A stretch of DNA of 64,000 nt from Octopus sinensis (GCF_006345805.1 NC_043021.1:9052001-9116000); one strand, 5' to 3'; counted from the stretch's first letter, positions 6,401 through 56,880 are shown. A program made the numbers and translations. The notes: generated from the letters alone by a model not told the origin.

Positions 6401-9400
6401 CCTGCGCCTATGTATACTAAATTTCAAGCATAAATTTCACTGGTACTTAATTTATTGACCCCAAAAGGACGAAAGGTAAAGTCGACCTCGGCAGAATTTG
6501 AACTCAGAACGTAACGGCAGACGAAATACCTATTTCTTTACTACCCACAAGGGGCTAGACACAGAGGGGACAAACAAGGACAGACAAACGGATTAAGTCG
6601 ATTATATCGACCCCAGTGCGTAACTGGTACTTATTTAATCGACCCCGAAAGGATGAAAGGCAAAGTCGACCTCGGCAGAATTTGAACTCAGAACGTAACG
6701 GCAGACGAAATACCGCTAAGCATTTCACCCGGCGTGCTAACGATTCTGCCAGTTTGCCGCCTTCAAAGGATGAAAGGCAAAGTCGACCTCGGCGGAATTT
6801 GAACTCAGAACGTAGCGGCAGACGAAATACCGCTAAGCATTTCACCCGGCGTGCTAACGTTTCTGCCAGCTCGCCGCCACTAAGCATTTCGTTTAGCGCA
6901 CTAATGATTCTGCCAGCTTGCCACCTTAATAATAATCATGATGATGATGATATCGCTTACCTCATATTCTTTGACTTCTGACGGACCTAGTGCAAGTTTA
7001 GATTTCAATAGAAACGGGCAGTAATCAGTGGTGCTCATCTCTAGTCCATTCACTAAGATATGAATCAATTCAACGTTACACTCCACCCAGTGGTTACTCA
7101 GGTTTCGGATAGCTATTGAACTCTTCTCAGCTATACCGATACAGCAGTCTGAGAATTTGGCCAGTGAGGACACGTCCAGAACGGATTTGCATGCTGCTAG
7201 ATTGGGGTCTGCCAAAACAGAACTGCAGTTTCCGGTGTGGCCAAGCTGATCTTTAGGAAGTGGTTCGCTAGCAGTCAGCATGGACATGAATGGATTCAAC
7301 TGAGTCTGTTCGAGAGGTTCCTCAATGATCGTTTTCCAAAGTTTTGATTCGTCAGTGCCTTCACCAATGAAGTTCTGCTTCGTCTTGTTAGCATGCTGCA
7401 CTGAACAGCCCTCATTAGGTGGCCCTTCCAGCTTCCTACTTGGGTGCATAGTATCATCACTGAATTTCTTATTTTCGCAATATGGTCCGACACCAGCCAT
7501 AGAGATTTTGGTGGCTTCTGGTTTAATTTTAGTGGAAGAGGTAAGGTTTGTTTCGGACTTGAAACTTAACTGACGCTGCAAGTTATCTTCACCAGTACCA
7601 ATTCCGGATCTCATCGACAGTCTAGATTGAGGAACGTAAACATTCTCATTAGTAGCCAAAGCTTTCGCCCTCAAGGAGTCAAGAGAGTGTACAAGATGTG
7701 GTCGAACAAACTCATCTTGGTGTTGTAGGTCACTGCTGACCTGTGGGCGATGGGAGTCAGATAACGGAGAAGACGCATATTCGGGGTTTTTTGATGATAC
7801 AGCAGGTGCGGAATGTACTGTTCTCTGAAGTTTACTGGCAGCACTGGTAGTAGAAACAGAGGTAGCTGACAGAGCCGGTCTTTCTCGAGAAGGTACACCA
7901 CCCATCATGTCAAGATTAAATACTCCTGAGGAGGGAATAGTTTGTATAGAGTGGGTAGAAACTGCACTGGGAGAAGATCTACTCTGTATGAAACTAGGAG
8001 CAGGTACCCGGGAAGGCACAGTTTGCATAGAGTGAGTAATAGATGTACCTGGAGAAAATACACCTCTGGAGATATTTACAGGTGTCTCGGAAGAGAGTTT
8101 AGTTCTCAGATCACGAGGAGCTGTGGGTGCTGTTAGTGTCAAAGAAGGAGTTGAACTTGACATTGATGATGCAGTATGTAATATAGAAGTTGGCGCCGAC
8201 ACAGAAGGAACTTTTAGAGGGTCTATAGAACGTGGTGCCAACGACAACGGAATTTTCTGAGTGTCTATAGAACTTGGTGCTGACGAAAATAGAACTTTCC
8301 GAGGGTATGTAGATGTCGGCGCTGACAAAGAGGTGACTTTCTGAGCATCTCTGAGACTTGGTGTCAACGATAACGGAGCTTTCTGCGTGCGTCCAGAAAT
8401 TGGTGCCGATGATAACGAACCGTTCTGTGTACGTAAAGAACTCGGTTCCAGTAACGATGGGTCCCTCAATGTGTCTGCACTTGATAAAGACACAGAAAGT
8501 TCTGTAAACGGAGCCTCATCACTGAAACTATGCAAAGCTTTTTGAGAGGGGTTCAAACCCTGTGTGGCGTTGATGTGAAGCTGTTGTGTGGGGTTGTGCA
8601 ACTCCAGACCACCAGTAACTCTTGGAGAAGTGTCACTCTGTGATGTTGCCGTTTTGCAGTATTTGGCATCAACCTGATGGGAGGATTCCTTTTTCTGAAC
8701 ACTTCCTCTTGACCTGCACCTGTGGTTAACTTCGGATTCAAATCTAGATGCTATTTCTTTACAGGGCAGGGACAAGCTCACTCCATCGAGCATATCTGAG
8801 ATTAAACTGTTACTAACCAAAGACTGTGAAACCAAGGTGAGATCTGAAAAAATACAAAGAGAAGAAAAACGATACAAACATATAAACACACACATACACT
8901 CAGTCTAAAGATTCTATCAATGAAGCTTTGCTTCTTTGTCAAAAACAAAGCTCCTTAAAAAGAAAAAAGCTCAAATAATGATATTTATAGGAAAGAGACA
9001 AGAGATGGTGTTACACATTCATATCTATGTGTATACGTAGGTATACGTGTGTAGAATACATCCCCACTTTTAGCACTATTTTGTTAGCTTACACATTTTC
9101 CCCCAGTGGTTGGGTTTTCCACATGCTTTGCAGTGTGTACCGAATGCAGGACATTTCTTCCGGTTATTGAACTCATGCTCCGTACCACAGTACTGGCATG
9201 TTCTTTGTTTGCGGGTATGTTTCGTCCTATACCTAGATACAATATCTACACTGCTGCCTAGTGCGCTTGTTTGTAAAGTGAGACCATTTGTTTGGTAGCG
9301 GCTTCGAATGCTCTTGCAGTGTCTACTGCTTCCATTAACTGGAGAGCGTCCTTACCTATGAGGGATTTCTGGACTTCTTTATGAGCACACCCCCATATGA

Positions 9401-11003: not shown

Positions 11004-14000
11004 TACGACAGGCTTCTTTCAGTTTCCGTCTACCAAATCCACTCACAAGACATTGGTCGGCCCGGGGCTTTAAAAGAAGACACTTGCCCAAGATGCCACG
11101 TAGTGGGACTGAACCCGGAACCATGTGGTTGGTTAGCAAGCTACTTACCACACAGCCACTCCTGCGTCTGTATATGCTTTTTTGCTATTTTACACTTATT
11201 TTGTTGTTCCTAGACTAGGAAATAATATTTATTATTAATATTTTAATGGATTTAATGAAAAATTTTAGGTGTTCATTTACATATATTTTAAAGATCCGTG
11301 AAGTCGTGAATCAGCGATAGTTGAACCGTGAAATAGCGAGGGATCACTGTATGTGAAACTTAACCCTTTAGTAATTTAAACCAAACAGATCCGGCCCAAA
11401 TATCTAACATGTTTTATGTCCAAAGTGGCCAGTTTTAGCCTATCACACTTCACCTACAATGCCATTCCGAAAATAAACAATTACATCATTTAACCCTTTA
11501 GCGTTTAAACCGGCCATATCCGGCCAAAAGTATTCTGCCTGTTTTATGTTCAAACTGGCCAGATCTGGTCTCTCACACCAACCCTACAATATCGTTTTAA
11601 AAATTAACAGCTACCTCATCAAAATCTCATAGCTACAAGATAATGCATGATTAGTTCAAAACAATAAGGATAAAAAAGGATTAATTTTGGCAGAATAATG
11701 CGAACACTAAAGGGTTAAATCTCAAAGCTATAAGACAATGTAGGATTAATTCAAAGCAATGTAAATAAACAAGAATTGCATTTGACAGAATAATCTGAAC
11801 GCTAAAAGGGTTTATCGAGGTTGTATAGTAAGTTTTGAAGCTATAATTGCATAAAGAATTTATTCATGCAATAAGAATTTTATCCACAAACTCACTGTTG
11901 TCTTGACAACCATCACTCTGCAATGTGTCGCTATTATTATTATTATTACCCTCCTGTTTCTCGTCCGGTATTTGCAACTGTTCACAAAACGATACTGTAG
12001 GATTCTGCTCAGGATTTGCCGCCTCCAGATCCTTATTCTTCTTTACTGACATGTGCATAGGGTGTTGGATATCTTGCAGCTGCACAGATGATGTTCTGGT
12101 TCCCACATCTGCCAAATTCTCCAAGGCAGGTGAAGTAGCGGTTGACAAGGATTGGTTGTACAGAAACTGTAAGAGAGAAACACAAGGAACCGTCAAATAT
12201 ATTGGGTTGTCCGGAAAGTTTGTGCCGATTTTTAAAAGGAAAGAAAAAGGTCAATAAATACTTGCCATTACATTTTTAATCAACCAAATATGAACCATTT
12301 TGTTGCACAATGCGTCTCCATCTTTCCTTTACCTTGAAAATACCCTCTTCCCAGAATTGAGGTGGCTTCATGGCAAACAGTTCATCAAGGTACCTTTTTA
12401 CGTCATCCAAGGAATTGAAATTTTTACCATTAAGACTATTCTGCAGAGACTTGAATACGTAGAAATCCAAAGGAGCAATATCTGGTGAAAATGGAGGGTG
12501 AGGTAACACATCCCAGCCGAGCTGCAGCAATTTTTGTCTGGTTCCCAAAGCATCAAGTGCCGAAAATGAACTTTCCTATCTTCCATTTTAAAGGGTTACA
12601 GAATTAACCCAGGTTATAGGAACATAAACCTTCTTCCACGAAGAGACAGCTTAAACTGTGCTCTAAATGGAGGTGTAGACAAATCCTATTTTATGGACTC
12701 AACCATGTTCTAAAATAAGTCGAGAGGTAAGCTACTATAAATCAGCACAAACTTTCCAGACAACCCAATATAATTGGTTTCAAATTTTGACACAAGGCCA
12801 GCAATTTCAGGGGAGCAGGTAAGACTACATTGACCCCAGTGCTCAAATGGTACCTATTTTATTGACCCTGAAAGGATGAAAGACAAAGTCGAGCTCCACA
12901 GAATTTGAACTCAAAACATGAAGACGGACAAAATGCTGCTAAGCATTTTACCCAGCATGCTAACAGTGAAATAAGCCATCTAATCAAACATTAAATCGAT
13001 ATATTTCTTAAGAAAATCGAATAAGTTCTTGAGAAACCTACAGAATTTGGCAGAGTTTCAGAGCCTATTCTCATATAGGTGCCAACTGACATCCGGTCTT
13101 TTTCTCCTTGGTTAACAAAGCTGAGATGACTACAGTAACTCCAGTCGGTCAAATCAGTAGCCAGGGGTACTTCTAGGCATTTATCCTGGAAACAGATGAA
13201 CAGAAATTTAAGGATTTTAAAAGGACACAGACAGATAGTCAAACAGACAGAAAGTGGGGGGGGGGGCGAGTTTATGTCAGTCAGGGATGCACAAAAGCAA
13301 TGATATTAAAAAGCAAGACTCATGGAATCTTTTCGGTTTGAACGGCAGTTTTTAACATAATTTCTAGGTAACTAAAAAATTTTTAACTTCGTATACTGGT
13401 AGAATGTGTTTATAAAATATCTTTTTCTCTTGGCTTTATTGAGAAAATTCTATACTTTGTAAGATATTTGTTGTTGTTTTTCTTTAATTTCTGGAATTTC
13501 AACCAATCAATGACGTCTATTGAGTTAAAAAACATTGTGCCGTATGAATATGTCCCTTGTTTAAGAAACAGATTGGGTTTATTTACATTTGTGAAGAAAA
13601 AAAGATACCCTTCCCCGCACCCCTAAAACAGATTGAAATGCAATAGATCGTACTAGGGTCATAATTATGGGTGACAATTTCATATGACACCGCTAGAAAA
13701 AACTGCTGTTCAAACTGAAAAGATCCGACTCATGGAAATTCCTTGTTTTATAAATGTTCTTATTTCTATTTTGATGCATAAATTTATAGATCTGTGTAAC
13801 ATTGTTTCATTCTGCTAAAAGATTTCAGAGCGAGAAAGGAAAACGGTGAATTTATGCAAAATTCGTTAAAAGATTTTCTTACGTAATTGGAGCAATCATT
13901 TCTTCCATTGAATTCTGCTTCATCAGCATCTAATTTAGAAGTGCCGGAATCTAGAGAAAAGTAATTAAAATTAAAAGGAAAAAAATTCATCATCATAGTC

Positions 14001-23482: not shown

Positions 23483-26400
23483 AATATATATTTTACTCTG
23501 TTACTTGTTTCAGTCATTTGACTGTGGCCATGCTGGATCACTGCCTTTAGTCAAGCAAATCGACCACAGAACTCATTCTTTGTAAGCCTAGTACTTATTG
23601 TATCAGTCTCTTTTGCCGAATTGCTAAGCTATGGGGACATAAACACACCAGCATCGGTTGTCAAGTGATGTTGGAAACAAACATACACAAACATATACAC
23701 ATACATACATATATACGACAGGCTTCTTTCAGTTTCCATCTACCAAATCCACTCACAAGACTTTGGTCGACCCGAGGCTATAGTAGAAGACAATTGCCCA
23801 AGGTGCTACGCAGTGGGACTGAACCCGGGACCATATGGTTGGTAAACAAGCTACTTACCACATAGCCACTGCATGTATGTATGTTTGTGTGTCTGTGTTT
23901 GTCCCCCCCCAACATCGCTTGACAACCGATGCTGTATAGTGATTATCAAGCAGGGTCCATATGGCCCTTGGGGGGGTCTACATAAGATCTTGTCATTAAT
24001 ATTTATCTGCAATAAATTGGTTATACTTCTAACATACACAAAATATTAAAATTCCCCACCGGGATTGGACGCTAGTCTATCACGTATAAATTTCCCCACC
24101 AGGACTGGGAGCTGGCCAATCACATGTTAAGCAGATGTGATAAACACTAAACCATGGAACCACTATAGTTACATAATTAAAATCTCATGGCTACAAGATA
24201 ATGCAGGATAAATTCAAAAATGTTAAAGGGTTAAGTTCATTCAATGCAGCAGCTGTGGGCTTGAAGGTACCTTATATATATACTCCATGAAATATCCCCA
24301 CTCAACCAGGACATCTTGTCTTGCAAAGCCACATAGCAACCTCACTTGTGCCAGCGACACAAAAATAAGCATCCAGCTGTAGAAACTACATCAAAACAGA
24401 CAGGAGCTCAACACTGCCCTCTTGACCCACTGAAACCTGTCAATCTCTCCAAACTATGCCAGCCTAGAATACGGACACTAAGTGAGGAAAGAAGGAACAG
24501 GAAGGGGAGAGAGAAAAAGATCAAGAAAGATAGATACATACACATACATAGACAGAGTGAGCAAGCAAGAGAAAGAGAGACGCGCATACACACACAAAAC
24601 TTACTTGGTTTTCCAAGGTCAACACGTGGAAGCTTTGCACTTGCAGAACCCTTTAAAGACACCATAGATATCTCCCTGAGATTGTCTTCTATCAGATTTA
24701 GAATCGGTTGAGCTTCTTCAGGGTCTTCAAGTTCAAACTCACTGTCCAGCATCCGCAGATCCTCTTCCTTCAACTCAACAGGGGGCTGCTTGGAGCTGTC
24801 GCCCATACTTAACATGTGCATCTGAAGGAACGCCTGCGTCACATCCAAACGACCATTACCTGCGACGGACAGCTTCCTCTGGGCAGTGTCGACATTTCCC
24901 AAGGCATGGCGTCGGACTAACTCGATGTCAGACAATCTGGAAGACCGAGAGAGATTGGCCGTTTCTTTGGCAGAATCGACATTGGTTTGATTGAGAGGAT
25001 TCAACAGAGATTCCATTCCACCTGCAGTAAAAAAAAAATCAAAGATTATGAAAAAGTGCATGTGTGTGTGTTGGGGTCGAGGTGGAATTTTATCATTTAG
25101 TGTCTGTTTTTCATGCTGGCAGGGTTTGACTGGAGATGGTAAGCCGGAGAACTGCACCAGGCTCCAGTCTGTTTTGGCTGGGTTTCTACCTGTGGATACC
25201 CTTCCTAATGCCTACCACTCCACAGTGTACTGGGTGCCTGTTATGTGACAAGTACGGTTTCCTGTTATGTGTCACAGCTGCCTGTTATGCGTCATGGTCA
25301 CAAGAACGGGTGCCTGTCATGTGTCGCGGGGAACGGGTGCCTGTCATGTGTCGCGGGGAACGGGTGCCTGTCATGTGTCGCGGGGAACGGGTGCCTGCCA
25401 TGTGTCGCGGGGAACGGGTGCCTGTCATGTGTCGCGGGGAACGGGTGCCTGTCATGTGTCGCGGGGAACGGGTGCCTGTCATGTGTCGCGGGGACGGGTG
25501 CCTGTCATGTGTCGCGGGGAACGGGTGCCTCTCATGTGTCGCGGGGAACGGGTGCTTCTCATGTGTCGCAGGCACGGGTGCCTGTTATGTATCATGGGCA
25601 TGTACCTTAGGAATGAGAACCCAGGTTCGAAATTTCCCCAAGACACCTGATGAAGCCTGGAGGGTATATCAGCTGAAACGTTGTGCTAACAACAAACAAG
25701 ATGAGGACAAATATCCATTGATTGTAAATAATGTACATAATTCCTCATCTCTTAAATATAGAACTGCATAAGTTACTATGCTTAACAAGGTTAATTCCAT
25801 TTTTGGTTAAACACAGAAGATTGTCCTCCTTTATTACAAGAAATCAGAAAATGTGAAGGAAACTTACTCTGAAGGAATTCATCTGGAATAAGACCAAGAG
25901 ATGAAGCATTTGAGAGAATAGAATTCTCAGAATAAGCAGATATATTGTAAGGTTCCACTGCTGGAAAATTTGGTATAATGGTAGCAGATCTGTTTTTAAA
26001 AAAATACAAAAAAGGTTTAATTTTTAGAAAGATTCTTTGCCATCATAAACAATAAATAAAATATAAATAATCAGTGCCACATAAAAAAAAAAAAAACACC
26101 CAGTCCATTCTGTAAGTTGGTTAGTATTAGGGAGGGCATCCAGATGTGAAACCCATGCCAAAATAGACAGTAACACCTGGTGCAGCCCTCTAGTTTGTCA
26201 GTTCCTGTCAAACCGTCCAACTCATGCCAGCATGGAAAACAGATGTTAGATGATGATGATGATGATGATGAAGGTGGTGGTGATTGCAATCACGAACATC
26301 TTGTCTGTTAGGCACATGGGATTGCTAGAAATCATTGTCTTAGAAAAGCACATCAATATGGGTTCGGGCGTGAGCGTTTCTATATGGTGTAGGCACAACT

Positions 26401-41747: not shown

Positions 41748-41820
41748 AGGTTCCAGCGAGTTTCGAACTCGCGACCTTCTGCGTGTTAAGCAGATGTGAT
41801 AACCACTACACCATGGAACC
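41748..41820 (-). tRNA. tRNA-Val-AAC: tRNA-Val(AAC)
   Basis: Acceptor stem GGTTCCA/TGGAACC, anticodon arm TCTGC-TTAACAC-GCAGA, T arm GCGAG-TTCGAAA-CTCGC, T7 terminator downstream; position 73 = T. Confidence 0.92.
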
Positions 41821-43542
41821 ACTCGATATATAAAGGGTCTAAGTTATATATTTATAGAAAAAAATTACGGGTGATAAGGACTAATTCATAGAAATGTTTG
41901 TTTTGTTTTAATTAACTATGCTAATTGTGAATCGTTTCTAGTGCAACACGGTAAAACGAGAGTAACAGTGGTATAGTTTCGGTTTCAGTATCGCAGTCAC
42001 TTCAACTAGTAGTAATATCGCTTATTCCCGTATCATCCCCGAGCAGATTTATGATTAAATGAATTCCAGCCGAAACAATTCCCTCGTTTTTCTCAGCTAA
42101 TAATAATAATAATAATGATAATAATAATAATAAATGTTTTAAAGGAAATTTGGGTAAAAGTAGAGGAAAAGCGGCGTATTTAAAAATGCGAACAGCGGTA
42201 ATAGGGAAAGCAAAAAGCCTTTCCTGAATTAGTGAAACGAATTAATGTTTCGAAATAAACCATTATTTTGTATTTCATTTTCAATCAGTATTCAGAATTT
42301 TATGCTTCAGACATCGAAGAATCTGACAACGCTAACAGAAAAATAAATGTTTGTAATGTTTCCCATCTTTTTTCCAGGTTTTTGTTATTAACATATAACA
42401 CTTGATTTCGAAAATAAAAATTCTTCTTTACAGAAAGTGTTGCATATTGTACGAGAGGAAAAAATACCAATGTGTCACATTTATGTAGCTTTTTATCATT
42501 CTCGTAACCTACATTCCGAATTTCTGTAGCTCTTTATCATTCTCGTAAACTATATTCCGAATTTCTTGAATTTTAACACGCTTTAATTTATTTATTTATT
42601 CGTTTCAGTAATTTGGCACAGCCACGTCCGATTTTAGCCTTTCCTAATTATAATTTCTATATACTCATATCGTGTTACTGCAAATTTCATATCTCTCGCG
42701 GGTCAAATGATCTCATAGTAATTCTTACCGTGTTTAACTTCATGTCAGACCTCACCAAGCAGAACTATGAATAGAAAATATTCTACCTTTCCTAGGATTA
42801 CACTATCCAAGGTGTCTGTCCGTTAATAAAGCGTATTATTGGATAGAGGTTTGGCTGCCCTTTCGAGAAGATCGAGCGACAACGATCTTGTCGCTTTTGT
42901 TGGTTGGGTTTACTGGACTACTGTTTTTTTTTACTCTTTTACTTGTTTCAGTCATTTGACTGCGGCCATGCTGGAGCACCGCTTTTTTAGTCAAGCAAAT
43001 CGACCCCGGGACTTATTCTTTGTAAGCCCAGTACTTATTCTATCGGTCTCTTTTGCCGAACCGCTAAGTAACGGGGACGTAAACACACCAGCATCGGTTG
43101 TCAAGCAATGCTAGGGGGACAAACACAGACACACAAACACATACACACACACACACATATATATATATATACATATATACGACAGGCTTCTTTCAGTTTC
43201 CGTCTACCAAATCCACTCACAAGGCATTGGTCGGCCCGGAGCTATAGCAGAAGACACTTGCCCAAGATGCCACGCAGTGGGACTGAACCCGGAACCATGT
43301 CGTTGGTTAGCAAGCTACTTACCACACAGCCACTCGGGCATTGTTTTAATACCTCGTTTAAACGCAGATTTTTTTTTTATCTAATTTACCTCGGCAAAAA
43401 ACTGTAAGGTTTTGACATCGAAGGTTATTATTCTGGAAAAAATAATACAAAAGTTAATCTGAGAACAAATCAAAAATGAATAAGTTATGGAAACTGGCAA
43501 AATTTATTTTAAAACATTGAAATTTATATTTTCTAATTTATA

Positions 43543-44876: not shown

Positions 44877-45333
44877 CTGGAAAAAAATTTAAATTATAAA
44901 TATTTAAATATAAACTGCAAGCATAAGTTATATATTTTTATTTTTAGGGATAAAACGTAAATAAATGGTGGTAATACGAGAAAGTAAATTTAGTTGTTTA
45001 ATAGTTCAGTCATTTAGAAGTAATTACAGATATAAATAAACATAATGCGTAGTCAGTCATTCAGCAACACTTCTGCATTTTATCTATAGCAGAAAAAACA
45101 CTTGATCTATGAATCATAATCGATATTTGAAAACCATCGCTATAATATTTTTTACTGTTGTTGTTATTTTATAAATACACGAAGTTATTATACAATGCAT
45201 ATTTATTTTGCTAAATATTTATTTGATTTTATACTTGTGTATATTCGTGCGTGCGTGTGTGAGCGTATGAGAGAGAGAGAAGGGAGAGAGAGAGAAAGAG
45301 GAAGTGAAAGACAGATGTGTGTTTATACGCACG

Positions 45334-45357
45334 AACTGAAAACGAAAGTGAAACTAG
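45334..45357 (+). promoter_or_regulatory. ISRE/IRF-E-like motif, copy 1
   Basis: AACTGAAAACGAAAGTGAAACTAG: three GAAA half-sites at 6-bp spacing; GAAAGTGAAACT fits the ISRE consensus GAAANNGAAACT. Confidence 0.6.
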
Positions 45358-45638
45358 GCTGACTACTTTCAAAACAAAGAACGTAGCTGTATTTGTGTGA
45401 GAGCGAAAGAAAGGGAGATAGAGCGTTGATGGGTACATGCGTAACAGAACGATCTTCAATACAGATGTAAATAAATCTACGCCATCTATAGTAGTTCACT
45501 TTATGAGGCTGTGGTTTTTATTCATTTCGAAATTGTGTTAACCAAATGAACGAATTAATATACTTGCCCTTATTGAGGTGACACTCGTTAGCAATTAAAT
45601 CTGGGTGAAAATATATAGAATGTGAAAAAATTGGCACC

Positions 45639-45711
45639 AGGTTCCGACGAGGATCGAACTCGCGACAGTCTGTGTGTGAAACAGATGTGATAACCACTAC
45701 ACCACGGAACC
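45639..45711 (-). tRNA. tRNA-Val-CAC: tRNA-Val(CAC)
   Basis: GGTTCCG/CGGAACC stem, TCTGT-TTCACAC-ACAGA arm, TTCGATC loop, T6 terminator; position 73 = T. Confidence 0.9.
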
Positions 45712-46302
45712 TTATGAAGGGGCAAACCGAGATTTTAAGTATTTAAATGTAAACCAGAGAAAGCATTTTTACCCCTTGTTTTCAAGATTGAGCTATAAAA
45801 ACATTGATTGAGACAATATCAGAAATGCCAGAATGGAAGGGTTTCATATATGCAATGAAATGAACCTGGAACCCTTGATCAAATGGAATTATCGAAGCAG
45901 TTTCTGAAGCATCTTCCACTGGGGATGTTTAAATTATTTTTTAAAAGTCAAATTAGCAGTGGAGATAATTCTTCAGAAATTAGTTAACCAAAACTTTCGG
46001 TTATAAAAAACAAGATAGACTGGAATGATTTTGGTCTTTAAAACCAATTAGTAAAAAAAAGGGAAATGGACATGTTCCGACCTTATTAAGCCTTCTCAGC
46101 AAAGAGTATCCAGTTTCATCAGGTGGATAAAACTGAAAGCAATAAGGATGTACATGCGAATGAGTATCTGTATGTGTATATATGCTTGTTTGTATGCATG
46201 TATGTATATGTGTGTGTGTGTGTGTACGTATATATATGTGTGTGTGTACGTATATATATATATAGAGAGAGAGATATAGATATAGCGATAGATAGAGTGA
46301 TT

Positions 46303-46340
<38 letters not shown>

Positions 46341-47244
46341 TATATACATACTATATAGATATATGCCCACATACATATAAACATATTTACATATATATAT
46401 GCATATGTATGATCTTTAAATGTGTATATGTATATACATACATACATGCATATATATATATATATATATACATGCACATATATATATGCATATATATATA
46501 TGCATATGCAAGAATATATGAGAATGAGTATGCATATATATGCATACATACACACCGTATTTTAACGTGTATAAGGGACCCTGTCTTGTCAAAAATTAGG
46601 TTTAAAAAATATGGGAGTTTCTTATACACGGATACTATTATAATCCTTTACAAAAACATTTTTTCCAAATTTTAAGCCCCCAAAATTAGGGGGTTCCTTA
46701 TACACATTAAAATACCGTACATACGCGTGTGTGTGTGAATCTATATTGTTATGATTTTATGGGAGTCACCAAAATTGCTTGATTTTTTTAAAAATATATT
46801 AAACAAACAGAAAGCTCAGTTCAGTCAATTGCCGATAGAAATAAACATTAAGCAACAGGATTGTCACCAAGAGATGTCTCTGTATTTAAGCTACATTAGC
46901 TAACATTAACAACACGACTGTCAGCGAGAGCTGTCTTTGTTTTCGAGCTGCGACAATAAACAACATCGTTATAACTAACTTACACCAAAAGCACATTTGC
47001 CATCATTGTAAACAAACACATCATTGCTATGACATCATCGTTATTTTATTTCGAAAACAACAAGTTGTATAAGACTGCTTAATGGGCATTCTTTCGTTTT
47101 GGCTCCGCAAAACGAAGGAATACCTATTAATGCATGAATTTTGTTATATGATTAATTTTATAGTGTACCTTTAGTCTTTTTTTTTTAAATATATTTGTTT
47201 ATGCATTGTGTCTGTGATTGTATGTGAGTTCGCGCGAGCTACGT

Positions 47245-47264
47245 AAAAACGAAAGTGAAACTAG
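47245..47264 (+). promoter_or_regulatory. ISRE/IRF-E-like motif, copy 2
   Basis: AAAAACGAAAGTGAAACTAG. Confidence 0.6.
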
Positions 47265-47524
47265 AATGAATTTCATGTAAACAAACAGCGTAAATATATT
47301 TATGGGAGCGAAACAGCGACGAAGACGAAATGCAGTTACGCAACAACGGTTTCTTACACAGATGTAAGATGAACCAGTAGCAGTTATCTTTGTGAGGTTG
47401 GGATGTTCATTTATTCACAAATAAAATTAAGTGTGGAAACGAAGTCAATTAAAAGCCATTTAAGAAATAAATTTTAGCAGTAAATCATCGATAGAGGAGA
47501 AAACGCAGAAGAAAAATATTCCAC

Positions 47525-47597
47525 AGGTTCCGACGAGAATCGAACTCGTGACATTCTGTGTGTGAAACAGATGTGATAACCACTACACCACGGAACC
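47525..47597 (-). tRNA. tRNA-Val-CAC: tRNA-Val(CAC)
   Basis: Full cloverleaf, perfect T stem ACGAG/CTCGT, T5 terminator; position 73 = T. Confidence 0.9.
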
Positions 47598-47942
47598 CGC
47601 GAGTGCAATCTTATGACAGTAACGTATATATTATAAGCAATATTTATAAGTGAATCTGGGACAATTAAAATTTTTTTTTTAAGGATGAAATATAAGAAAC
47701 AGTGGCAACATAAGAAATAGATAGGCTGGTAGTTTAATTGTTTGGTTAAAAGTAAGGGGTCGATTTGCTCGACTAAAGGTGGTGCTCCAGCATGGCCACA
47801 GTCAAATGACTGAAACAAGTAAAACAGTATTGTTATTAACGTATGTGTTTATTGTCTAATATCCCTTTAGTATTCGAATGTGTATTTGTTTTGCGCTCGT
47901 GAGTTCATGTGCATTTCGTGGAGTTGACGGTTCACAGACCAA

Positions 47943-47966
47943 AACTGAAAACGAAAGTGAAACTAG
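47943..47966 (+). promoter_or_regulatory. ISRE/IRF-E-like motif, copy 3
   Basis: AACTGAAAACGAAAGTGAAACTAG, identical to copy 1. Confidence 0.6.
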
Positions 47967-48152
47967 GCAAGTCTGAATCAAAGTAAAATATTTGTAAATA
48001 GGTTTGCATGAGACAGCGTTGATTGCAATTCCGTGTGAAATTGTGGTTTTCATGCATTTCTAGATAATCAGCTTCCAGTCGAGCAACGAATATTAATAGT
48101 AGATTGTAAGATGAAATATCCACAATATGAAAAAAGAAAAATTACAACCAAC

Positions 48153-48225
48153 AGGTTCCGACGAGGATTGAACTCGCGACATTCTGTGTGTGAAACAGAC
48201 GTGATAACCACTACACCACGGAACC
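48153..48225 (-). tRNA. tRNA-Val-CAC: tRNA-Val(CAC)
   Basis: Full cloverleaf, T loop TTCAATC, T5 terminator; position 73 = T. Confidence 0.88.
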
Positions 48226-48650
48226 CACGATGTAAACAAACGCAGTCATTAGTATTTAAATCAAAAACTAAAGACACTATTATTGTATGATTAACCCTTT
48301 ATTTTATGGGTGAAATATAGATAGATTTTATATAGATAGATAGTGGCGAGCTGAGAAAATAGAGCTCAGCCTTTTTTGAAACTGGTTACAGACGTAAACA
48401 TTAGCAACAGGATTGTGTCCATTAGAAACCTCTCTCCGTATTATACCCACAACAGACAAAACGAAATCAATATAACCGACGTAAACCAGTTGCGATTGAT
48501 ACAAACAATCGCATCATTTACGTAATACCAAAAATACATCATTTTGAAATAGTAATTATTATTATTGTTATTAACACACGAAGCGTCATATTCTGTACCT
48601 CTAGGTTGTTGTTTTTTTTGTTGCTTTTTTTAAATATTTATTTTCTGCAT

Positions 48651-48703
<53 letters not shown>

Positions 48704-48783
48704 TGCACGCGCGTGTGTATGTGCGTGTGCGCGCGTGTGTGTGTGTGTGTGTGTTTGCGTGCGTGTGTGTGTGTTTGCTTGTG

Positions 48784-48806
48784 AATTGAAAATAAAAGTG
48801 AAACTA
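48784..48806 (+). promoter_or_regulatory. ISRE/IRF-E-like motif, copy 4 (decayed)
   Basis: AATTGAAAATAAAAGTGAAACTA; central CG replaced by TA; followed by a SINE fragment rather than a tRNA. Confidence 0.45.
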
Positions 48807-48927
48807 CTCTTTTAATTGTTTCAGTCATTTGACTCCAGGACTTATTCTCTGTAAGCCTAGTACTTATTCTATCGGTGTCTTTTGTTACGGGGACATAAAC
48901 ACACCAGCATCGGTTGTCAAAAAATGC

Positions 48928-49140: not shown

Positions 49141-49220
49141 CTTTATTTAAAGCAGCAGAAAATTCAACAAAACCTGTTTTCTCTGAGGTTTTGTTGAATT
49201 TTCTGCTGCTTTAAATAAAG
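49141..49220. repeat. Perfect 35-bp inverted repeat with 10-nt loop
   Basis: ctttatttaaagcagcagaaaattcaacaaaacct / aggttttgttgaattttctgctgctttaaataaag. Confidence 0.95.
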
Positions 49221-49345: not shown

Positions 49346-49496
49346 TAGATATAGATATAGATATAGATATATATAGATATATATATATATATTATATATA
49401 TATATATAATATATATTATATAACAAAAAGAAAATACTACAAAGCGAGGACGTGGAACAAGTGTAGTGTTTATGTATGTATGTATGTATGTATGTA

Positions 49497-51420
49497 CTTC
49501 ACTCTTTGTTTGGTAAGGTATGGACTAGTGAATCTGTACCTGAGGACTGGAGAGATGCAGTAATGGTGGTCCTGTATAAGGGAAAGGGCAACAGGAATGA
49601 TTGTGGTAATTATAGGGGAGTATCATTGCTGTCTGCTGTAGGAAAGGTTTTATGCAGGATACTCCTGGATCGTCTGCTGAAATACATTGCAGATTGTGTT
49701 CTTCCAGAAAGTCAATCTGGCTTTCGTGTGGGACGTGGCATTGCTGATATGATCTTTTCAGCTAGACAGCTTCAGGAAAAGTGTGTGGAACAGGGTCTGG
49801 ATTTGTATCAGGTGTTTGTCGATCTGACAAAAGCCTTTGATACCGTCAATAGAAAAGCATTGTGGAAAGTCCTCCAGAAACTTGGGTGTCCTGAAAAGTT
49901 CCTTGCTTTGGTTAGGTCTTTTCATGAAGACATGAATGGTAGGGTGAATGTTAGAGGAAGATGTCGGAGCCCATTTCAATACAAAATGGAGTGAAACAGG
50001 GGGATATTCTGGCACCGACCCTATTTTCCATATATTTCGCGATGGTGTTCAGTATTGCATTCAGAAACTGCAGATACGGTGTTTACGTCCATTATCGAAC
50101 CTCTGGCAGCATATTTAATATCAGGCGCCTTGCTGCAAAAACAAAGATATTTACCTCTATCGTAAGAGACCTTTTGTATGCTGATGATTGTAAGCTGGTA
50201 GCACACACAGAGATTGATATGCAACACATTTTGAATGCATTCTCTGATGCTTGCACTGCCTTAGGATTGACAGTCAATCTCAAGAAAACTGTTGTCATGC
50301 ATCAACCTGCCCCTGGTAAGCAGTATAGTGTACCAAATATCTATGTGAATGGTAAACAACTTGATGTAGTCGATCAGTTTGTCTACCTGGGAAGCACTAT
50401 TAATAGATATGGCAATGTGGATGATGAAATTCCATATAGAATTAGGAAAGCAAGTGTTACTTTCGGAAAGCTAGAAAAGCGCCTCTGGAGTCGGCGAGAC
50501 ATATGCAGAAAGACAAAGATAGAGGTGTACAAGGCATGTGTGCTCCCTTCTCTTCTCTATGCCTGCGAGACGTGGGTCACAAATCGATACCACCTTAAAC
50601 AACTGGAACGTTTCCATCAGATGTGCCTCAGACGGATCTATATCATTAAGTGGAAGGACCGCCTCAGTGATCTTGAAATACTCGAAGGCTCTCGGTGTGA
50701 AAGTATAGAAGCTCTTGTGTTAAAGCAAAGGCTCAGATGGAGTGGTCATCTGGTCAGAATGAAGGATTCAAGGATGCCAAAACAACTCTTTTATGGAGAG
50801 TTAGCTAAAGGAGAACGACCTCCACATAAACCAAAAAGAGGTATAAGGACTTGCTGAAGGCTTCCTTAAGAGATGCTTGCATCTCTCCTGACACATGGGA
50901 AGGCATAGCTATTGATCGTAGCAGGTGGAGAAGGATTGTGCATGAGGGGACAGCCACGTTTGAGAAATCTCGAGTTGCACATGAGAAAGTAAGGAGGGAT
51001 GTCAGGAAGGGCATCGCTGTTACACTTCCAGAAGGGAAGGGTCTTCCTTTGATTCTGACATGCCATGTATGTGCGAGACCCTGCCTCAGTAAAGTTGGAC
51101 TCATGAGCCATCTTCGCAGTCATAAAATGAGACAGATGAGTGACAACATGGCCACTGGTGGTGGTGTAACACACCATACTAATCATACCTGTCGGGCATG
51201 TGGAAGAGAGTGTAATTCGGAAGGAGGACTTAAACGACATGCAAAGGTACATGAAGCCCAGTTACAACTACAGCCGGCTATTACCAATAAAGGTTTTAGT
51301 TGCCAATTTTGTACAAGACATTATAGATTTTTAGCTGAGCTAAAAAGTCACATTCGATCACAGCACCAGTAACAGTTAAGCTTAGTGCAATGGCCATACT
51401 CGATAACGAGGGGGCAGCCA
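49497..51420 (+). mobile_element. 5'-truncated RTE-clade LINE (RT plus three C-terminal C2H2 fingers), two frameshifts
   Basis: NYRGVSLLS, PESQSGFR, FVDLTKAFD, GVKQGDILAP, LYADD, LRWSGH motifs across ORFs 49476-49994, 49961-50857 and 50851-51372; (TATG)n on both sides. Confidence 0.95.
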
Positions 51421-51455: not shown

Positions 51456-51722
51456 TGTATGTATGTATGTATGTATGTATAGCTGATGTATTTCAGTGTG
51501 CATGTGTGCGCCCCTAACATTTTCCGCACTAATTCCTATATAACCGTCGCTGTCCCTTAGCAACACCTTTTCCATTTTATCTGCTGGGGCCATGAGGCAG
51601 TCTCACTTACAGGAAACTGTACGTTGCATTCCTTAACTAATTATATCCAAGCAATAATTTATGGTTATAATATCTACATTGTATGAAAGGAATTCGTAAA
51701 AATTTTCTTCAAGACATGTCAA

Positions 51723-51795
51723 GGTTCCATGGTGTAGTGGTTATCACATCTGCTTAACACGCAGAAGGTCGTGAGTTCGAAACTCGCTGGAACCT
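51723..51795 (+). tRNA. tRNA-Val-AAC: tRNA-Val(AAC)
   Basis: GGTTCCATGGTGTAGTGGTTATCACATCTGCTTAACACGCAGAAGGTCGTGAGTTCGAAACTCGCTGGAACCT, followed by a long T run. Confidence 0.92.
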
Positions 51796-52670
51796 AGTGG
51801 GCTTTTTTTTTTTTTTCATTTTTATGAGGTGCAAGAATGTTGGTGAAAACTTAACATACCCAATCAAAGGGGTTCCTGCAACCACACCTCCTTGCTTTGC
51901 TTCCCCATAACTTTCAGAAAGAGGATACTTTTTTTGAACGAAAATTTTTTTTTATAAATACCTTCAAAATGGGGGTATATTCAGAGTACGCCGGTATTTG
52001 TAGTGAACATTTTTTCAGCGTGAGTGGGGAAGAGAGAGCTCCCTTTTTTTCTCTGAAATTTAATAGGAAACAGCATCGACTTGTGTTAATTATCCGAAAG
52101 AACTCTCTGTCTTCATCACTCACGCTGAAAAAATGCTCACTAAAAATACCGACATACTTGGAATATAGCCCGTTTTACTCTTTTACTTGTTTCAGTCATT
52201 TGACTGCGGCCAAGCTGGAGCACCGCCTTTAGTCGAGCAAATCGACCCCGGGACTTATTCTTTGTAAGCCCAGTACTTATTCTATCGGTCTCTTTTGCCG
52301 AACCGCTAAGTGACGGCGACGTAAACACACCAGCATCGGTTGTCAAGCAATGCTAGGGGGACAAACACAGACACACAAACATACACATACACATATACAC
52401 AATATATATACATATATACGACGGGCTTCTTTCAGTTTCCGTCTACCAAATCCACTCACAAGGCTTTGGTCGGCCCGAGGCTATAGTAGAAGACACTTGC
52501 CCAAGATGCCACGCAGTGGGACTGAACCCGGAACCATGTGCAAAAAAAAAATCCTCTTTCTGAAAGTTATGGGGAAGCAAAGCAAGGAGGTGTGGTTCTT
52601 TGATTAGGTATGTTAAGTTTTCACCAACATTCCTGCACCTCATAAAAATGCAAAAAAAAAAAGTCCTAAT

Positions 52671-52743
52671 AGGTTCCAGCGAGTTTCGAACTCACGACCT
52701 TCTGCGTGTTAAGCAGATGTGATAACCACTACACCATGGAACC
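52671..52743 (-). tRNA. tRNA-Val-AAC: tRNA-Val(AAC)
   Basis: Identical 73-mer to the 51723 copy; long T-run terminator. Confidence 0.92.
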
Positions 52744-52887
52744 TTGACAAGAGAAATGTGCAAATTTAAAGACTATACAGATGTACATGTCAACAGGGCT
52801 CACACGTAAATACCCACGTGTGTTATGTGTAAAGTTGCGTCTATACACGTGTGTATAGTCTTTAAATTTGCTCTCTTCTCTTGTCAA

Positions 52888-52960
52888 GGTTCCATGGTGT
52901 AGTGGTTATCACATCTGCTTAACACGCAGAAGGTCGTGAGTTCGAAACTCGCTGGAACCT
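52888..52960 (+). tRNA. tRNA-Val-AAC: tRNA-Val(AAC)
   Basis: Identical 73-mer; T4 tracts downstream. Confidence 0.92.
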
Positions 52961-54362
52961 ATCAAGGCATTTCTTTTGTTTATTTTATGAAATGTAGGGA
53001 TGTCAGTAAAATATTAATCCAGCTTTTGTCTCACGGTGTATGAGATCCGCTGGTCGACCCAAGCATTTCTACCCATAGATTACTCTGTTGAAAGAACAAC
53101 AAGGAAATTTCACTTATGGCAAAAAAAATATAGAGAGAGGCGGCGCAGGAGCGGCTGTGTGGTAAGTTGCTTGCTTGCCAACCACATGGTTCTGGTTCAG
53201 TCCCACTGCGCGGTGCCTTGGGCAAGTGTCTTCTACAATAGCCTCGGGCCGACCAAATGATGATGATAATGATGATACGTATGCGTGCATGCGTGTGTGT
53301 GTGTGTGTGTGTGCACGTCGCACTAGTCCGCGTGTACCTTTGCGTTTGTCCCACATTGCTTGACAATCGGTGTCGGTTTGTTTACGTCCCAGTGATAAGA
53401 GTTACCAGACTAAAAAAATAAGTACTGGGTCGATTTGATTGACTATAAAGGCCCTTCAAAGCTATAAACCAGTCTGGCTATAGTTCAATGATTAAAACAG
53501 GTGAAAGAGAGCATACTATCACACGTGTGTCCCACTGGCCTCCACCGACTTCGCGGTAAATTTTTACAAGTACACCCTTCGCAGTAAATTTACCGACTTT
53601 GCTTCTTCATGATTTTTGGAGAGAGGGATAGTTTTTAGTGAAATTTTCTGCAACTATCCTTGAGATGGTGTAGATTCTGATCATATCGGAATTTAATGAG
53701 AAAAGAGAAAACTTGTGGGCGTGCACCCATACATACTGACACACATCACACATACTCTTTTCTCTTTTACTTGTTTCAGTCATTTGACTGCGGCCATGCT
53801 GGAGCACCGCCTTTAGTCGAGCAAATCAACCCCGGGACTTATTCTTTGTAAGCCTAGTACTTATTCTATCGGTCTCTTTTTGCCGAACCGCTAAGTGACG
53901 GGGACGTAAACACACCAGCATCGGTTGTCAAGCGATGTTGGGGGGTCAAACGCAGACACACAAACACACACATATATATACATAGATACAACGGGCCTCT
54001 TTTAGTTTCCGTCTACCAAATCCACTCACAAGGCTTTAGTCGGCCCGGGGCTATAGCAGAAGACACTTGCCCAAGGTGCCACGCAGTGGGACTGAACCCA
54101 TGTGGTTGGTTAGCAAGCTACTTACCACACAGCCACTCCTACGCCTACATGTACAAAATTGAAATATAGAAAAAAAAATTATAAGTACCAGTACGTATAT
54201 ATACGTGCCCACTATTTAATTTATTTACACCATTAGAAAGGTATTTATAGAAAACTTCATTAAAAAATATCCATTCTTATTTCCAAGTTAGGAGGAAACA
54301 AACCTAGCGGACGTGGAGCAGACTTCAACATCCTCATGATAAAGAGAAAAAAATGTTTACCT

Positions 54363-54435: not shown

Positions 54436-54996
54436 TCAACGAAGGTAACCATGCAAATTTAAAGATTATAGACACAAATATATATCGCGCACGCTCGCAC
54501 GCATACATATGCATTCTAGATTTATATGCGAGGATGTCCCAATAAAAGTTTACTTCGTAATCATAATATCCAGGTGTAATCTCACTGCTTTATTTTATTA
54601 ATGTCCTTCAACGCGATAATTGTTTTGGTACTCGAACGGCTGAATGCTTCGCGATCCATTTTTATAGCGCTTATTGACAACAATTCGGATGTATTTAGGT
54701 ATGTGTATATAATGTGCTGGCGAATGTGTACCTACAAGTGTTAGGATTGTACATTTTGTGTGTCCTTGCTTTGACCTGGCGTGATAGTTGTAGATGAGTG
54801 TCACCGTCATACAAGCAGTGTTATTCGTTTTCTAATAGCCAGTCTAAACTTGTCTGTCCATGCGAAAATATTACCTTGCTTAGAAACTGATAATGAGGAC
54901 TGGTAGACGGGAAGGACAGTAGAAAATATGCCTCGAATAAGCCTGAAAAAGTGGACGTTAAAACAATGATGTTGATGACGATGATGATGATGATGG

Positions 54997-55199: not shown

Positions 55200-56880
55200 T
55201 TTGAGTTTGTGTGCGTGTGCCTTTGAGTTTGTCCCCGCATCGCTTGACAACCGGTGTTAGTTTGTTTACATCACAGTAAAACAACAACAAAAAAAAAGGT
55301 ACCGATAGAATAAATTCTAGACTTGTAAAATAAAGGGTCAACCCAAAATAAGCAGAGGGATCGATTTGATAAGCTATGCCCCATTTTGGTCGCAGTTCGA
55401 TGAATGAAACGAGTAGAAGAGTGATACGTTTTTGAGAGCATAGATTACGGTTATGTTGATAACATTAATATTCTTTTAAAGGTAGTTTGGATCCTCGTTC
55501 TTACACAATTATTCCCCGACTCCGATTTTGTCCCGTCATAACTTTTAGAAACTTGGATATTTCTTACTGAAATTTTCTATATATACTTTTCAGATTGTAT
55601 AGATTATGAAGACATCGGAATTTAAAAAGAAAGGGCAGGGATCTTTTCTTTTTGAAGGCCAGATTTTCCTAGAAGGCCAGATTTTCCTAGAAAAGATCCA
55701 AGGGCATTCTTTCGATATAACTCGACAAAATCAAAACAGTTTATTCCGGTATTTCCGTGGAAGCAAATAACAGTTCGATTCTGTTTTCTGCTTGGAAATT
55801 TGCGGATTGGATCTTTTCCTTTTGAACGGCACTTTTCAACACAATTTCTAATTAACTAAACACTTCAAAACTTCGTATACTGGTAGAATGTGTCAAAATA
55901 AAACATTTTTTTTCTCTTAGCTTTCTTGATAAAATTGTAATTTGTTTGTTTAACGTAGTTTAATTTTACACACACACACAGGTAAGAACAAATATGCAAG
56001 GCTTTTTTTTTTTCTTTTAAAGTTTAAAATGAGACATTGTTGGCATATATCTTCGTTATATCTATACTCCACAACCGACGGAAATACCCGAAGTGAAATT
56101 ATTTGATTTTGTCGAGTTATATCGAAAGAATGCCCGAATATGTATCTCAGCAAAGTTTCATAGAAAAATATGCATTTTCTTTATAAAGTTACGACGAAAC
56201 ATCGCTGAGGGAGCACCATCTGAAGTTAGGACGACCTAATTGTGGCTGTGTGGTAAGTAGCTTGCTTACCAACCACATGATTCCGAGTTCAGTCCCACTG
56301 CGTGGCACCTTTGGCAAGTGTCTTTTACTAAAGCCTCGGGCCGACCAAAGCCTTGTGAGTGGATTTGGTAGACGGAAACTGGAAAGAAGCCCGTCGTATA
56401 TATGTATATATGTGTGTGTGTGTATGTGTGTTTGTCCCCACAACATCGCTTGACAACTGTTCATTGCCCGGTTGTCAATGCAACATTCGGAACAAGTCTC
56501 CAGTCTGAGTATAACTTTCTCCCCGACCTGTCTTAAAGAAGCAGTGAAAAGTTATAGACAGTATTTTTGCTCTGAATAATCATTTAAAAGTAAAATATTG
56601 CCGAAAAACGATGGTGAGAAAACATTTTGAAAGAGAAGATATTATAAGCAAGGGAATTAATCAGTAAAATCTAAAAGGTATTGATTTGTTGCAGCGTCCT
56701 TGTGAAATCTAATTAAACGAGCAAATTAGATCAGTAAATTATTATAAGCTTTAATATTTATTTAATTCTCCATACATAAATGTAAAAGTATAAAATGTAA
56801 ACAAAAACCGAAGTTGATAATACGATATAAATAATGCAAACAACAATATATACTTTAAATTTGCCAAAGTCTAACGTCAA

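What the first reader, a model, noticed from the sequence alone, without database searches (positions are those of the whole stretch)
45334..48806. IRF/ISRE-type motif conserved in the diverged spacers of a tandem tRNA-Val(CAC) array
Seen: the spacers of the head-to-tail CAC genes are homologous (e.g. aaacatta(a)gcaacaggattgt at ~46843 and ~48395) but heavily diverged. In contrast GAAAACGAAAGTGAAACTAG is identical at ~45338 and ~47947, differs by one base at ~47245, and survives decayed at ~48787. The three best copies lie about 190-280 bp from the 3' end of a tRNA; the copy with no following tRNA is the decayed one. Known: GAAANNGAAACT and tandem GAAA half-sites at 6-bp period are the IRF/ISRE consensus, and molluscs encode IRFs. 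Inference: the site is under selection and may link innate-immune signalling to tRNA output or to an antisense Pol II transcript. A weak donor-like AGAT|GTAA sits about 100-140 bp downstream of each intact copy (~45466, 47363, 48106), which could mark alternative plus-strand first exons.
Basis: partly seen in the sequence, partly recalled or inferred. Interest (0 to 1): 0.75.

Follow-up and report, generated by a model that had tools for sequence, protein, structure and literature searches.

The report
Conserved ISRE-like site in tRNA-Val array
Each repeat of an old tandem array of octopus tRNA-Val(CAC) genes keeps an almost unchanged 20-base sequence that matches the textbook interferon-response (IRF/ISRE) binding site, so it is probably a selected protein-binding site, but what it controls is untested.

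Summary
Three tRNA-Val(CAC) genes lie head-to-tail on the minus strand, each with its own T-run terminator. GAAAACGAAAGTGAAACTAG lies 185-280 bp downstream of each. Two copies are exact, one has 1 mismatch, and a fourth has 3 mismatches and no tRNA. The repeat units are collinear, but their spacers are only 47-54% identical in aligned columns. The motif is 97% identical, as conserved as the tRNA (95%). No other spacer block stands out.

Its 14-mer GAAAGTGAAACTAG is the core of the standard mammalian ISRE reporter, and oyster IRFs activate such reporters. The motif is not part of the abundant SINE, occurs nowhere else in the window, sits in no predicted RNA structure, and matches no Rfam family.

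The exact 19-mer occurs 3 times in 596 Gb of prokaryote genomes. It occurs at about 20 unrelated, tRNA-free loci in eukaryote-like metagenome contigs, some with a kB-like site beside it. That fits a general cis-element.

IRF binding, inducibility and any link to tRNA output are untested. The proposed splice donors are weak, and one is not positionally homologous. Genome-wide and cross-species tests could not be run. Best reading: a selected IRF-type (or PRDM1-type) site whose target is unknown.

The parts
45338..45357 (+). ISRE-like 20-mer, unit 1 (exact). The block identical to unit 3 spans 45334-45359 (AACTGAAAACGAAAGTGAAACTAGGC).
47245..47264 (+). ISRE-like 20-mer, unit 2 (first base G>A; 19/20).
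47947..47966 (+). ISRE-like 20-mer, unit 3 (exact). The 26-mer 47943-47968 is identical to unit 1.
48788..48807 (+). Decayed copy, unit 4 (GAAAATAAAAGTGAAACTAC). The CpG is lost and the 3' edge abuts a SINE insertion.
45638..45712 (-). tRNA-Val(CAC) gene 1, with terminator TTTTTT just downstream.
47524..47598 (-). tRNA-Val(CAC) gene 2, with terminator TTTTT.
48152..48226 (-). tRNA-Val(CAC) gene 3, with terminators TTTTT and TTTTTT.
45003..45760 (.). Repeat unit 1: left spacer, TG-rich tract, motif, right spacer, tRNA, TATA-like tRNA upstream.
   Evidence: collinear matches
46818..47650 (.). Repeat unit 2 (the most complete).
47830..48290 (.). Repeat unit 3. Its left part is replaced by a SINE fragment at 47756-47829.
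48395..48804 (.). Partial unit 4 (left spacer, (TG)n and motif only), followed by a SINE at 48805 and a LINE at 49476-51372.
45499..45528 (+). The only other weakly conserved spacer block (70-73% identity), containing TGTGGTTTT in units 1 and 3.
45461..45470 (+). It is collinear with 47358-47367 only, and the unit 3 look-alike at 48101-48115 is not collinear.

Best explanation
The 20-26 bp block is a protein-binding cis-element of the ISRE/IRF-E type. It consists of tandem 5'-AANNGAAA-3' cores in 6-bp phase. Purifying selection has held it in every tRNA-bearing unit of an old tandem tRNA-Val(CAC) array while the rest of each spacer drifted to near saturation. The most likely binder is an IRF-family protein, with a PRDM1/Blimp-type competitor possible. 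The site would then act as a small, position-flexible enhancer or promoter module inside the spacer. Shown: the conservation, the sequence identity with the canonical ISRE, and the absence of a repeat, RNA-structure or Pol III-box explanation. Inferred: protein binding and its identity. Unresolved: the target. The site could open chromatin for the neighbouring Pol III gene, or it could drive a plus-strand Pol II transcript that runs antisense into the tRNA. A TATA-like TATTTRT lies 25-45 bp after the motif in the units.
For: Motif identity is 58/60, against 0.47-0.54 for flanking aligned columns and 213/225 for the tRNA. The longest exact spacer blocks are 19-26 nt against a null maximum of 13-15. 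The motif's 14-mer equals the ISRE reporter and probe core. Oyster IRF2 and IRF8 activate mammalian ISRE and IFN-beta reporters. Strict GAAANNGAAACT occurs only 4 times in 64 kb (0.27 expected), all within 300 bp of a tRNA-Val gene. No other copy of the 12-mer core exists in the window, and the spacers resemble nothing else in it. There is no RNA structure signal (z -0.8 to +1.2) and no Rfam match. The exact 19-mer has 3 hits in 596 Gb of prokaryote genomes but occurs at about 20 distinct eukaryote-like metagenome loci with unrelated flanks. Some of those are promoter-like or have GGGAATTYCC 4 bp downstream. The one copy separated from its right-hand neighbours by a SINE has decayed, losing its CpG.
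Against: There are no binding, expression or chromatin data. Only three paralogous copies at one locus were seen. No genome-wide count or distant-species comparison was possible. No κB or other partner site lies beside the octopus copies. The six tRNA-Val(AAC) genes in the same window lack the 20-mer. An exact 19-mer recurring at many independent loci in another organism is sharper than usual for a transcription-factor site, so a different long-footprint binder or an RNA-level role is not excluded. Presence of IRF genes in this octopus was not verified here.
Confidence: 0.5

Rival explanations
1. Same kind of DNA site, different reader. A PRDM1/Blimp-1-type zinc-finger protein, or another long-footprint factor, binds the GAAAGTGAAA core, and the element has nothing to do with IRF or innate immunity.
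For: The motif contains AAGTGAAA and ACGAAAGTG, close to the PRDM1 consensus, which overlaps IRF-E (established knowledge). Conservation covers spacer positions and the CTAG flank, i.e. 19-26 nt, which is longer than a pair of IRF cores needs.
Against: The last half-site is GAAAC, not GAAAG. The 14-mer is an exact ISRE core. κB-like sites sit next to the same 19-mer in other eukaryotic contigs, which suggests an immune-type module.
Confidence: 0.15
2. The block is a piece of a low- or moderate-copy dispersed element, or a hitch-hiking relic. It was inherited by the units and has no function of its own.
For: The locus is riddled with SINE, LINE and MITE insertions. A decayed (TG)n tract adjoins every copy. 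The genome outside the 64 kb window plus 31.5 kb could not be searched.
Against: Descent alone does not explain 97% identity inside roughly 50%-identical flanks. No other copy exists in the window or in L040. The block is not in the abundant SINE. There is no inverted partner or shared flank.
Confidence: 0.15
3. The element works at the RNA level. On the minus strand it reads CUAGUUUCACUUUCGUUUUC, a U-rich element in a host pre-mRNA or a read-through transcript. The neighbouring Cep192 gene is on the minus strand.
For: In the RDH-like paralogues of the metagenome contigs the same sequence sits 9-11 nt into an intron, in sense orientation, right after the donor site. Cep192 exons on the minus strand lie at 6.9-25 kb.
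Against: There is no evidence that the array is inside a transcribed intron. There is no structure signal. In other contigs the motif lies upstream of a TATA box and first exon on the GAAA strand (L006), which suggests a DNA-level site.
Confidence: 0.1
4. The element belongs to the Pol III machinery: a back-up terminator, a TFIIIC or 'ETC' site, or a 3' flank enhancer.
For: It lies downstream of each tRNA. Its minus-strand form has a T4 run.
Against: Each gene already has a T5-T6 terminator 2-12 nt after its 3' end. The distance varies between 185 and 280 bp. There is no resemblance to A or B boxes. The six AAC genes lack it. The same 19-mer elsewhere is never next to a tRNA.
Confidence: 0.05

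Closest known systems
Vertebrate ISRE / IRF-E (ISG54-type ISRE GGGAAAGTGAAACTAG; (AAGTGA)n hexamer repeats; PRDI/III of IFN-beta)
   Same: It has an identical 14-mer core. It has tandem AANNGAAA cores in 6-bp phase, three of them in units 1 and 3. In other eukaryotic contigs the same 19-mer sits beside κB-like sites, as in the IFN-beta enhancer.
   Different: It lies in the spacer of a Pol III tRNA gene array, not in a known Pol II promoter. No inducible gene has been identified. The organism has no known interferon. Binding is untested.
Molluscan IRF-responsive promoters (oyster CgIRF2/8, CgIFNLP axis)
   Same: The phylum is the same, and its IRFs recognise mammalian ISRE sequences (PMC5557890; PMC8218723 listed).
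   Different: Those sites are in promoters of protein-coding immune genes, and no tRNA linkage has been described.
Extragenic control elements of tRNA genes (upstream TATA-like boxes; Pol II factor sites near active tRNA genes)
   Same: The tRNA-Val genes here do carry a conserved TTTAAAT about 30 nt upstream. The idea that nearby Pol II-type factor binding favours Pol III genes is established for mammals (general knowledge).
   Different: The motif is downstream of the terminator, at a variable distance, and is specific to the CAC units.
tRNA-targeting retroelements and tRNA-derived SINEs
   Same: They share proximity to tRNA genes and an adjoining simple repeat.
   Different: The tRNAs are intact and have their own terminators. 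There are no shared flanks, TSDs or extra copies.

Membership tests
ISRE / IRF-E cis-element | Sequence match to GAAANNGAAACT / tandem AANNGAAA cores | tested here: met
   GAAAGTGAAACT is exact in 3 units. The 14-mer equals the reporter ISRE core.
ISRE / IRF-E cis-element | Bound by IRF-family DNA-binding domains | not testable with these tools
   The only indirect evidence is that oyster IRFs activate mammalian ISRE reporters.
ISRE / IRF-E cis-element | Confers virus-, dsRNA- or IFN-inducible transcription on a linked promoter | not testable with these tools
   No expression data are available.
ISRE / IRF-E cis-element | Located in the promoter or enhancer of a Pol II gene | tested here: inconclusive
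   No gene could be assigned. A TATA-like TATTTRT lies 25-45 bp downstream in the units. The donor-like block is weak and not collinear in unit 3.
Dispersed transposon terminus or internal segment | Many copies sharing at least one flank, with TIR or TSD | tested here: not met
   There are 0 extra copies in the remaining 60 kb of the window and in 31.5 kb of O. bimaculoides. There is no inverted copy. The whole genome could not be searched.
Pol III extragenic or internal control element (A/B box, ETC, terminator) | Fixed position relative to the gene; box consensus or T-run function | tested here: not met
   The distance is 185/259/280 bp. The genes have their own terminators. The element is absent from the AAC genes.
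Structured non-coding RNA | Stable or conserved fold, or an Rfam match | tested here: not met
   z-scores range from -0.76 to +1.16. Rfam finds only tRNAs.
tRNA pseudogene relic | Significant alignment of the spacer or motif to tRNA-Val | tested here: inconclusive
   The best case is unit 2 at p about 0.02; the others give p 0.07-0.6.

The most novel reading that the evidence does not exclude
An IRF-type factor docks in the spacer of each tRNA-Val(CAC) gene and couples innate-immune signalling to the supply of one valine isoacceptor. It could do this by opening chromatin for Pol III or by firing an antisense Pol II transcript into the tRNA gene. The exact 19-20-mer would also be a sharply defined invertebrate 'super-ISRE' that recurs unchanged at many unrelated loci in other animals.
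Probability: 0.12. Interest if true: 0.8.

Novelty: new member of a known kind. Interest (0 to 1): 0.45.

Why it matters
If the site is bound and inducible, it would be the first cis-regulatory link between an IRF-type pathway and specific tRNA genes. It would also be a rare defined regulatory element in a cephalopod genome. The three genes differ by diagnostic bases, so copy-specific tRNA sequencing could test the link directly. If it is only a conserved factor site for an unseen Pol II transcript, it is an ordinary, though clean, example of a constrained non-coding element.

Tried and rejected
1. Octopus orthologues or paralogues through spurious ORFs spanning the motif: no candidates.

2. 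Reaching the orthologous array in O. bimaculoides through the neighbouring Cep192 gene. P0001 and L040 were retrieved, but the locus stops at about window position 26.2 kb, an estimated 13-15 kb short of the array.

3. A relic second tRNA or an internal duplication in the spacer as the source of the motif or of 'AGATGTAA'. Shuffle tests gave p 0.02-0.6, so this is not supported.

4. Part of the abundant SINE: no. That SINE carries a different IRF-E-like GGAAACTGAAAGAAG.

5. A TIR or MITE terminus: no inverted copies.

6. An snRNA-type PSE: no Rfam gene near the motif in 20 metagenome loci.

7. RNA structure: none.

8. Identifying the host of the metagenome contigs by contig prefix in the literature: nothing useful.

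9. Chance: excluded.

Full report
**What is there**

ARAGORN and Rfam find nine tRNA-Val genes in the window. Three carry anticodon CAC and lie head-to-tail on the minus strand, at 45638-45712, 47524-47598 and 48152-48226. Each is followed within a few bases by a T5-T6 run, and the three differ from one another at 2-4 of 73 positions.

The 20-mer GAAAACGAAAGTGAAACTAG is on the plus strand. It is exact at 45338 and 47947, has one mismatch at 47245, and has three mismatches at 48788. That is four hits against 0.02 expected. In tRNA orientation the motif therefore lies 280, 259 and 185 bp downstream of the three genes, beyond their terminators.

**The repeat units**

The units are homologous and collinear over about 700-800 bp:
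- Unit 1: 45003-45760.
- Unit 2: 46818-47650.
- Unit 3: 47830-48290, with its left part replaced by a SINE fragment.
- Unit 4: 48395-48804, left half only.

A SINE whose 5' end begins at about 48805 abuts the fourth motif copy, and a LINE reverse-transcriptase gene follows at 49476-51372. This explains why that copy has no tRNA to its right.

**Is the conservation more than chance?**

Yes. Between units, the longest exact matches outside the tRNA are the motif itself, at 19, 19 and 26 nt. Shuffled controls never exceed 13-15 nt, and every other shared block is 14 nt or shorter.

Identities in the three-unit alignment:

| Region | Pairwise identity |
|---|---|
| Motif | 58/60 (0.97) |
| tRNA | 213/225 (0.95) |
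| Spacers, ungapped columns | 0.47-0.54 |
| Spacers, gaps counted | 0.34-0.38 |

Only the motif (45332-45362) and the tRNA exceed 80% in 20-column windows. With about 0.3 probability that a column is identical in all three units, 19 of 20 such columns is of order 1e-9 per window (my calculation).

The units are old, and purifying selection on this block is the simplest reading. The orphan copy has lost the motif's single CpG on both strands (ACG>ATA) and is truncated by the SINE. That is consistent with loss of constraint once the copy was cut off from whatever lay to its right.

**What the sequence is**

- Units 1 and 3 read AACTGAAAACGAAAGTGAAACT. This is three tandem AANNGAAA cores in 6-bp phase, the IRF core (established knowledge).
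- Unit 2 keeps two adjacent cores. The orphan keeps the outer two.
- The 14-mer GAAAGTGAAACTAG is identical to the core of the standard ISRE reporter and probe GGGAAAGTGAAACTAG.
- Oyster IRF2 and IRF8 activate mammalian ISRE and IFN-beta reporters (PMC5557890).
- The strict consensus GAAANNGAAACT occurs only four times in 64 kb (0.27 expected). Three are the CAC units. The fourth is GAAACCGAAACT at 41975-41986, 155 bp upstream of the tRNA-Val(AAC) gene at 41748-41820.

**What it is not**

- Not part of the abundant octopus SINE. That SINE has 15 copies of its 5' head in the window, and none shows the motif in the sequence examined. It does carry its own IRF-E-like GGAAACTGAAAGAAG.
- Not repeated elsewhere. 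The 12-mer core occurs only at the four sites. The spacers match nothing else in the window except tRNAs, SINE fragments and microsatellites. No copy exists in 31.5 kb of O. bimaculoides sequence.
- Not a TIR. There are no inverted copies.
- Not a structured RNA. z-scores run from -0.76 to +1.16, and Rfam gives only tRNAs.
- Not a fixed-geometry Pol III element. The distances vary, the genes have their own terminators, and the six AAC genes lack the motif.
- Not demonstrably a tRNA relic. A relic tRNA or internal duplication in the spacer is not statistically supported.

**Evidence from elsewhere**

The exact 19-mer AAAACGAAAGTGAAACTAG has 3 hits in 596 Gb of prokaryotic genomes but 36 in the metagenome collection.

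About ten of the 36 are bacterial or protist-like chance hits. One further hit (L035) lies in an acidic coding stretch of a transposase-like ORF and also looks like chance. The rest fall on about 20 distinct contigs of roughly 44-46% G+C that carry introns, LINE and piggyBac fragments. These look like host DNA of an unidentified animal or animals.

Their flanks are unrelated except within three small paralogue or orthologue groups. None has a tRNA or an Rfam RNA. The contexts include:
- A promoter-like arrangement: motif, then TAAATATA, then a short first exon (L006).
- A κB-like GGGAATTYCC 4 bp after the motif (L007, L022/L031, and a near-match in L027).
- A site 9-11 nt into the same intron of three of four RDH-like paralogues (L001, L017, L034); in the fourth, L032, the motif lies about 410 bp from that exon.

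This shows the 19-mer is a general, discrete cis-element rather than something specific to tRNA spacers. It fits an IRF/Rel-type module. The exactness across independent loci is sharper than usual for a factor site, and an RNA-level role cannot be excluded.

**Context and the cross-species attempt**

Cep192 exons lie on the minus strand at 6.9-25 kb. The O. bimaculoides orthologue is 87% identical at protein level, and alignable non-coding DNA is 85-94% identical. The window therefore comes from a different but close octopus species.

The retrievable O. bimaculoides locus (L040) stops an estimated 13-15 kb short of the array. The next hop failed. At roughly 90% neutral identity, that species would in any case have little power to test a 20-mer. 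The paralogue comparison within the array is the stronger test.

ACAGATGTAA is shared collinearly by units 1 and 2 only, and at 10 nt it is within the chance range. The unit 3 look-alike lies on the other side of the TGTGGTTTT block, so it is not homologous. The donor scores are weak (-1 T). A TATA-like TATTTRT 25-45 bp after the motif is compatible with a plus-strand core promoter, but that is not evidence for one.

**Verdict**

This is a real, selectively maintained element that is a canonical ISRE in sequence. It is most likely a binding site for an IRF-type (or PRDM1-type) factor. Its target and any link to tRNA-Val(CAC) expression remain hypotheses. It is a new instance of a known kind of element in an unusual place, and its interest is moderate until binding or expression data exist.

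Noticed in passing
L001-L036 (metagenome contigs): The exact 19-mer AAAACGAAAGTGAAACTAG recurs at about 20 distinct eukaryote-like loci with unrelated flanks, against 3 hits in 596 Gb of prokaryote genomes. The host organism or organisms are unidentified. This is far sharper than a usual factor site.
   Followed up: partly
L007 1520-1553; L022 (=L031) around 836-870; L027 around 600-632: In these contigs the 19-mer is followed 4 bp later by a κB-like GGGAATT(T/C)CC (a near-match in L027), giving a composite IRF+Rel-type module reminiscent of the IFN-beta enhancer.
   Followed up: partly
L001 2250-2930; L017, L034, L032: Retinol-dehydrogenase-like paralogues are associated with the motif. In L001, L017 and L034 it sits in sense as CTAGTTTCACTTTCGTTTT, 9-11 nt after the donor of the '...GKYY' exon. 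In L032 it lies about 410 bp from that exon. L001 has four tandem variants beside duplicated exon pieces.
   Followed up: partly
window 41975-41986 (-): A second canonical ISRE, GAAACCGAAACT (ISG15-like), lies 155 bp upstream of the tRNA-Val(AAC) gene at 41748-41820. It is the only strict ISRE in the window outside the CAC array.
   Followed up: partly
window, 14 sites, e.g. 6262, 11016, 41333, 52429, 57375: The abundant octopus SINE carries an IRF-E-like GGAAACTGAAAGAAG next to its internal microsatellite, so IRF-like half-site pairs are dispersed genome-wide by this repeat.
   Followed up: no
window 45738-45753, 48251-48266, 52855-52870, 54452-54466, 56852-56866: A conserved TATA-like TTTAAAT lies about 30 nt upstream of most tRNA-Val genes (gtctTTAAATttgc in the AAC genes), a likely Pol III upstream promoter element.
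   Followed up: no
window 51722-52744 and 52670-52961: The tRNA-Val(AAC) genes form a convergent inverted-duplicate pair (51722+ / 52670-) with mirrored 3' flanks and a SINE between them. They also form a divergent pair (52670- / 52887+) only 142 bp apart.
   Followed up: no
window 46557-46720: A MITE-like insert with roughly 27-bp terminal inverted repeats (CGTATTTTAAYGTGTATAAGGRACCC) lies between units 1 and 2.
   Followed up: no
window 49476-51372 (+): A LINE-type reverse transcriptase ORF has a C-terminal pair of C2H2 zinc fingers, directly right of the truncated fourth unit.
   Followed up: partly
window 6901-8895, 11715-12202, 24369-25115 (-); L040: Cep192 exons lie on the minus strand. 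The O. bimaculoides orthologue (LOC106878835, CM046625.1) is 87% identical in protein and 85-94% in alignable non-coding DNA, so the window is from another, closely related octopus. The tRNA cluster lies upstream of, or in a 5' intron of, this gene.
   Followed up: partly
window 24125-24161: An isolated 37-nt fragment is 86% identical to the 5' half of tRNA-Val, a tRNA relic far from the cluster.
   Followed up: no
window 49145-49216: A near-perfect 30-nt inverted repeat (aaagcagcagaaaattcaacaaaacc ... ggttttgttgaattttctgctgcttt) forms a long hairpin. It gives only sub-threshold miRNA-like Rfam hits.
   Followed up: no
window 45510-45518, 48042-48050: TGTGGTTTT (RUNX-like core) lies in the only other weakly conserved spacer block. 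It is kept in units 1 and 3 and diverged in unit 2.
   Followed up: no
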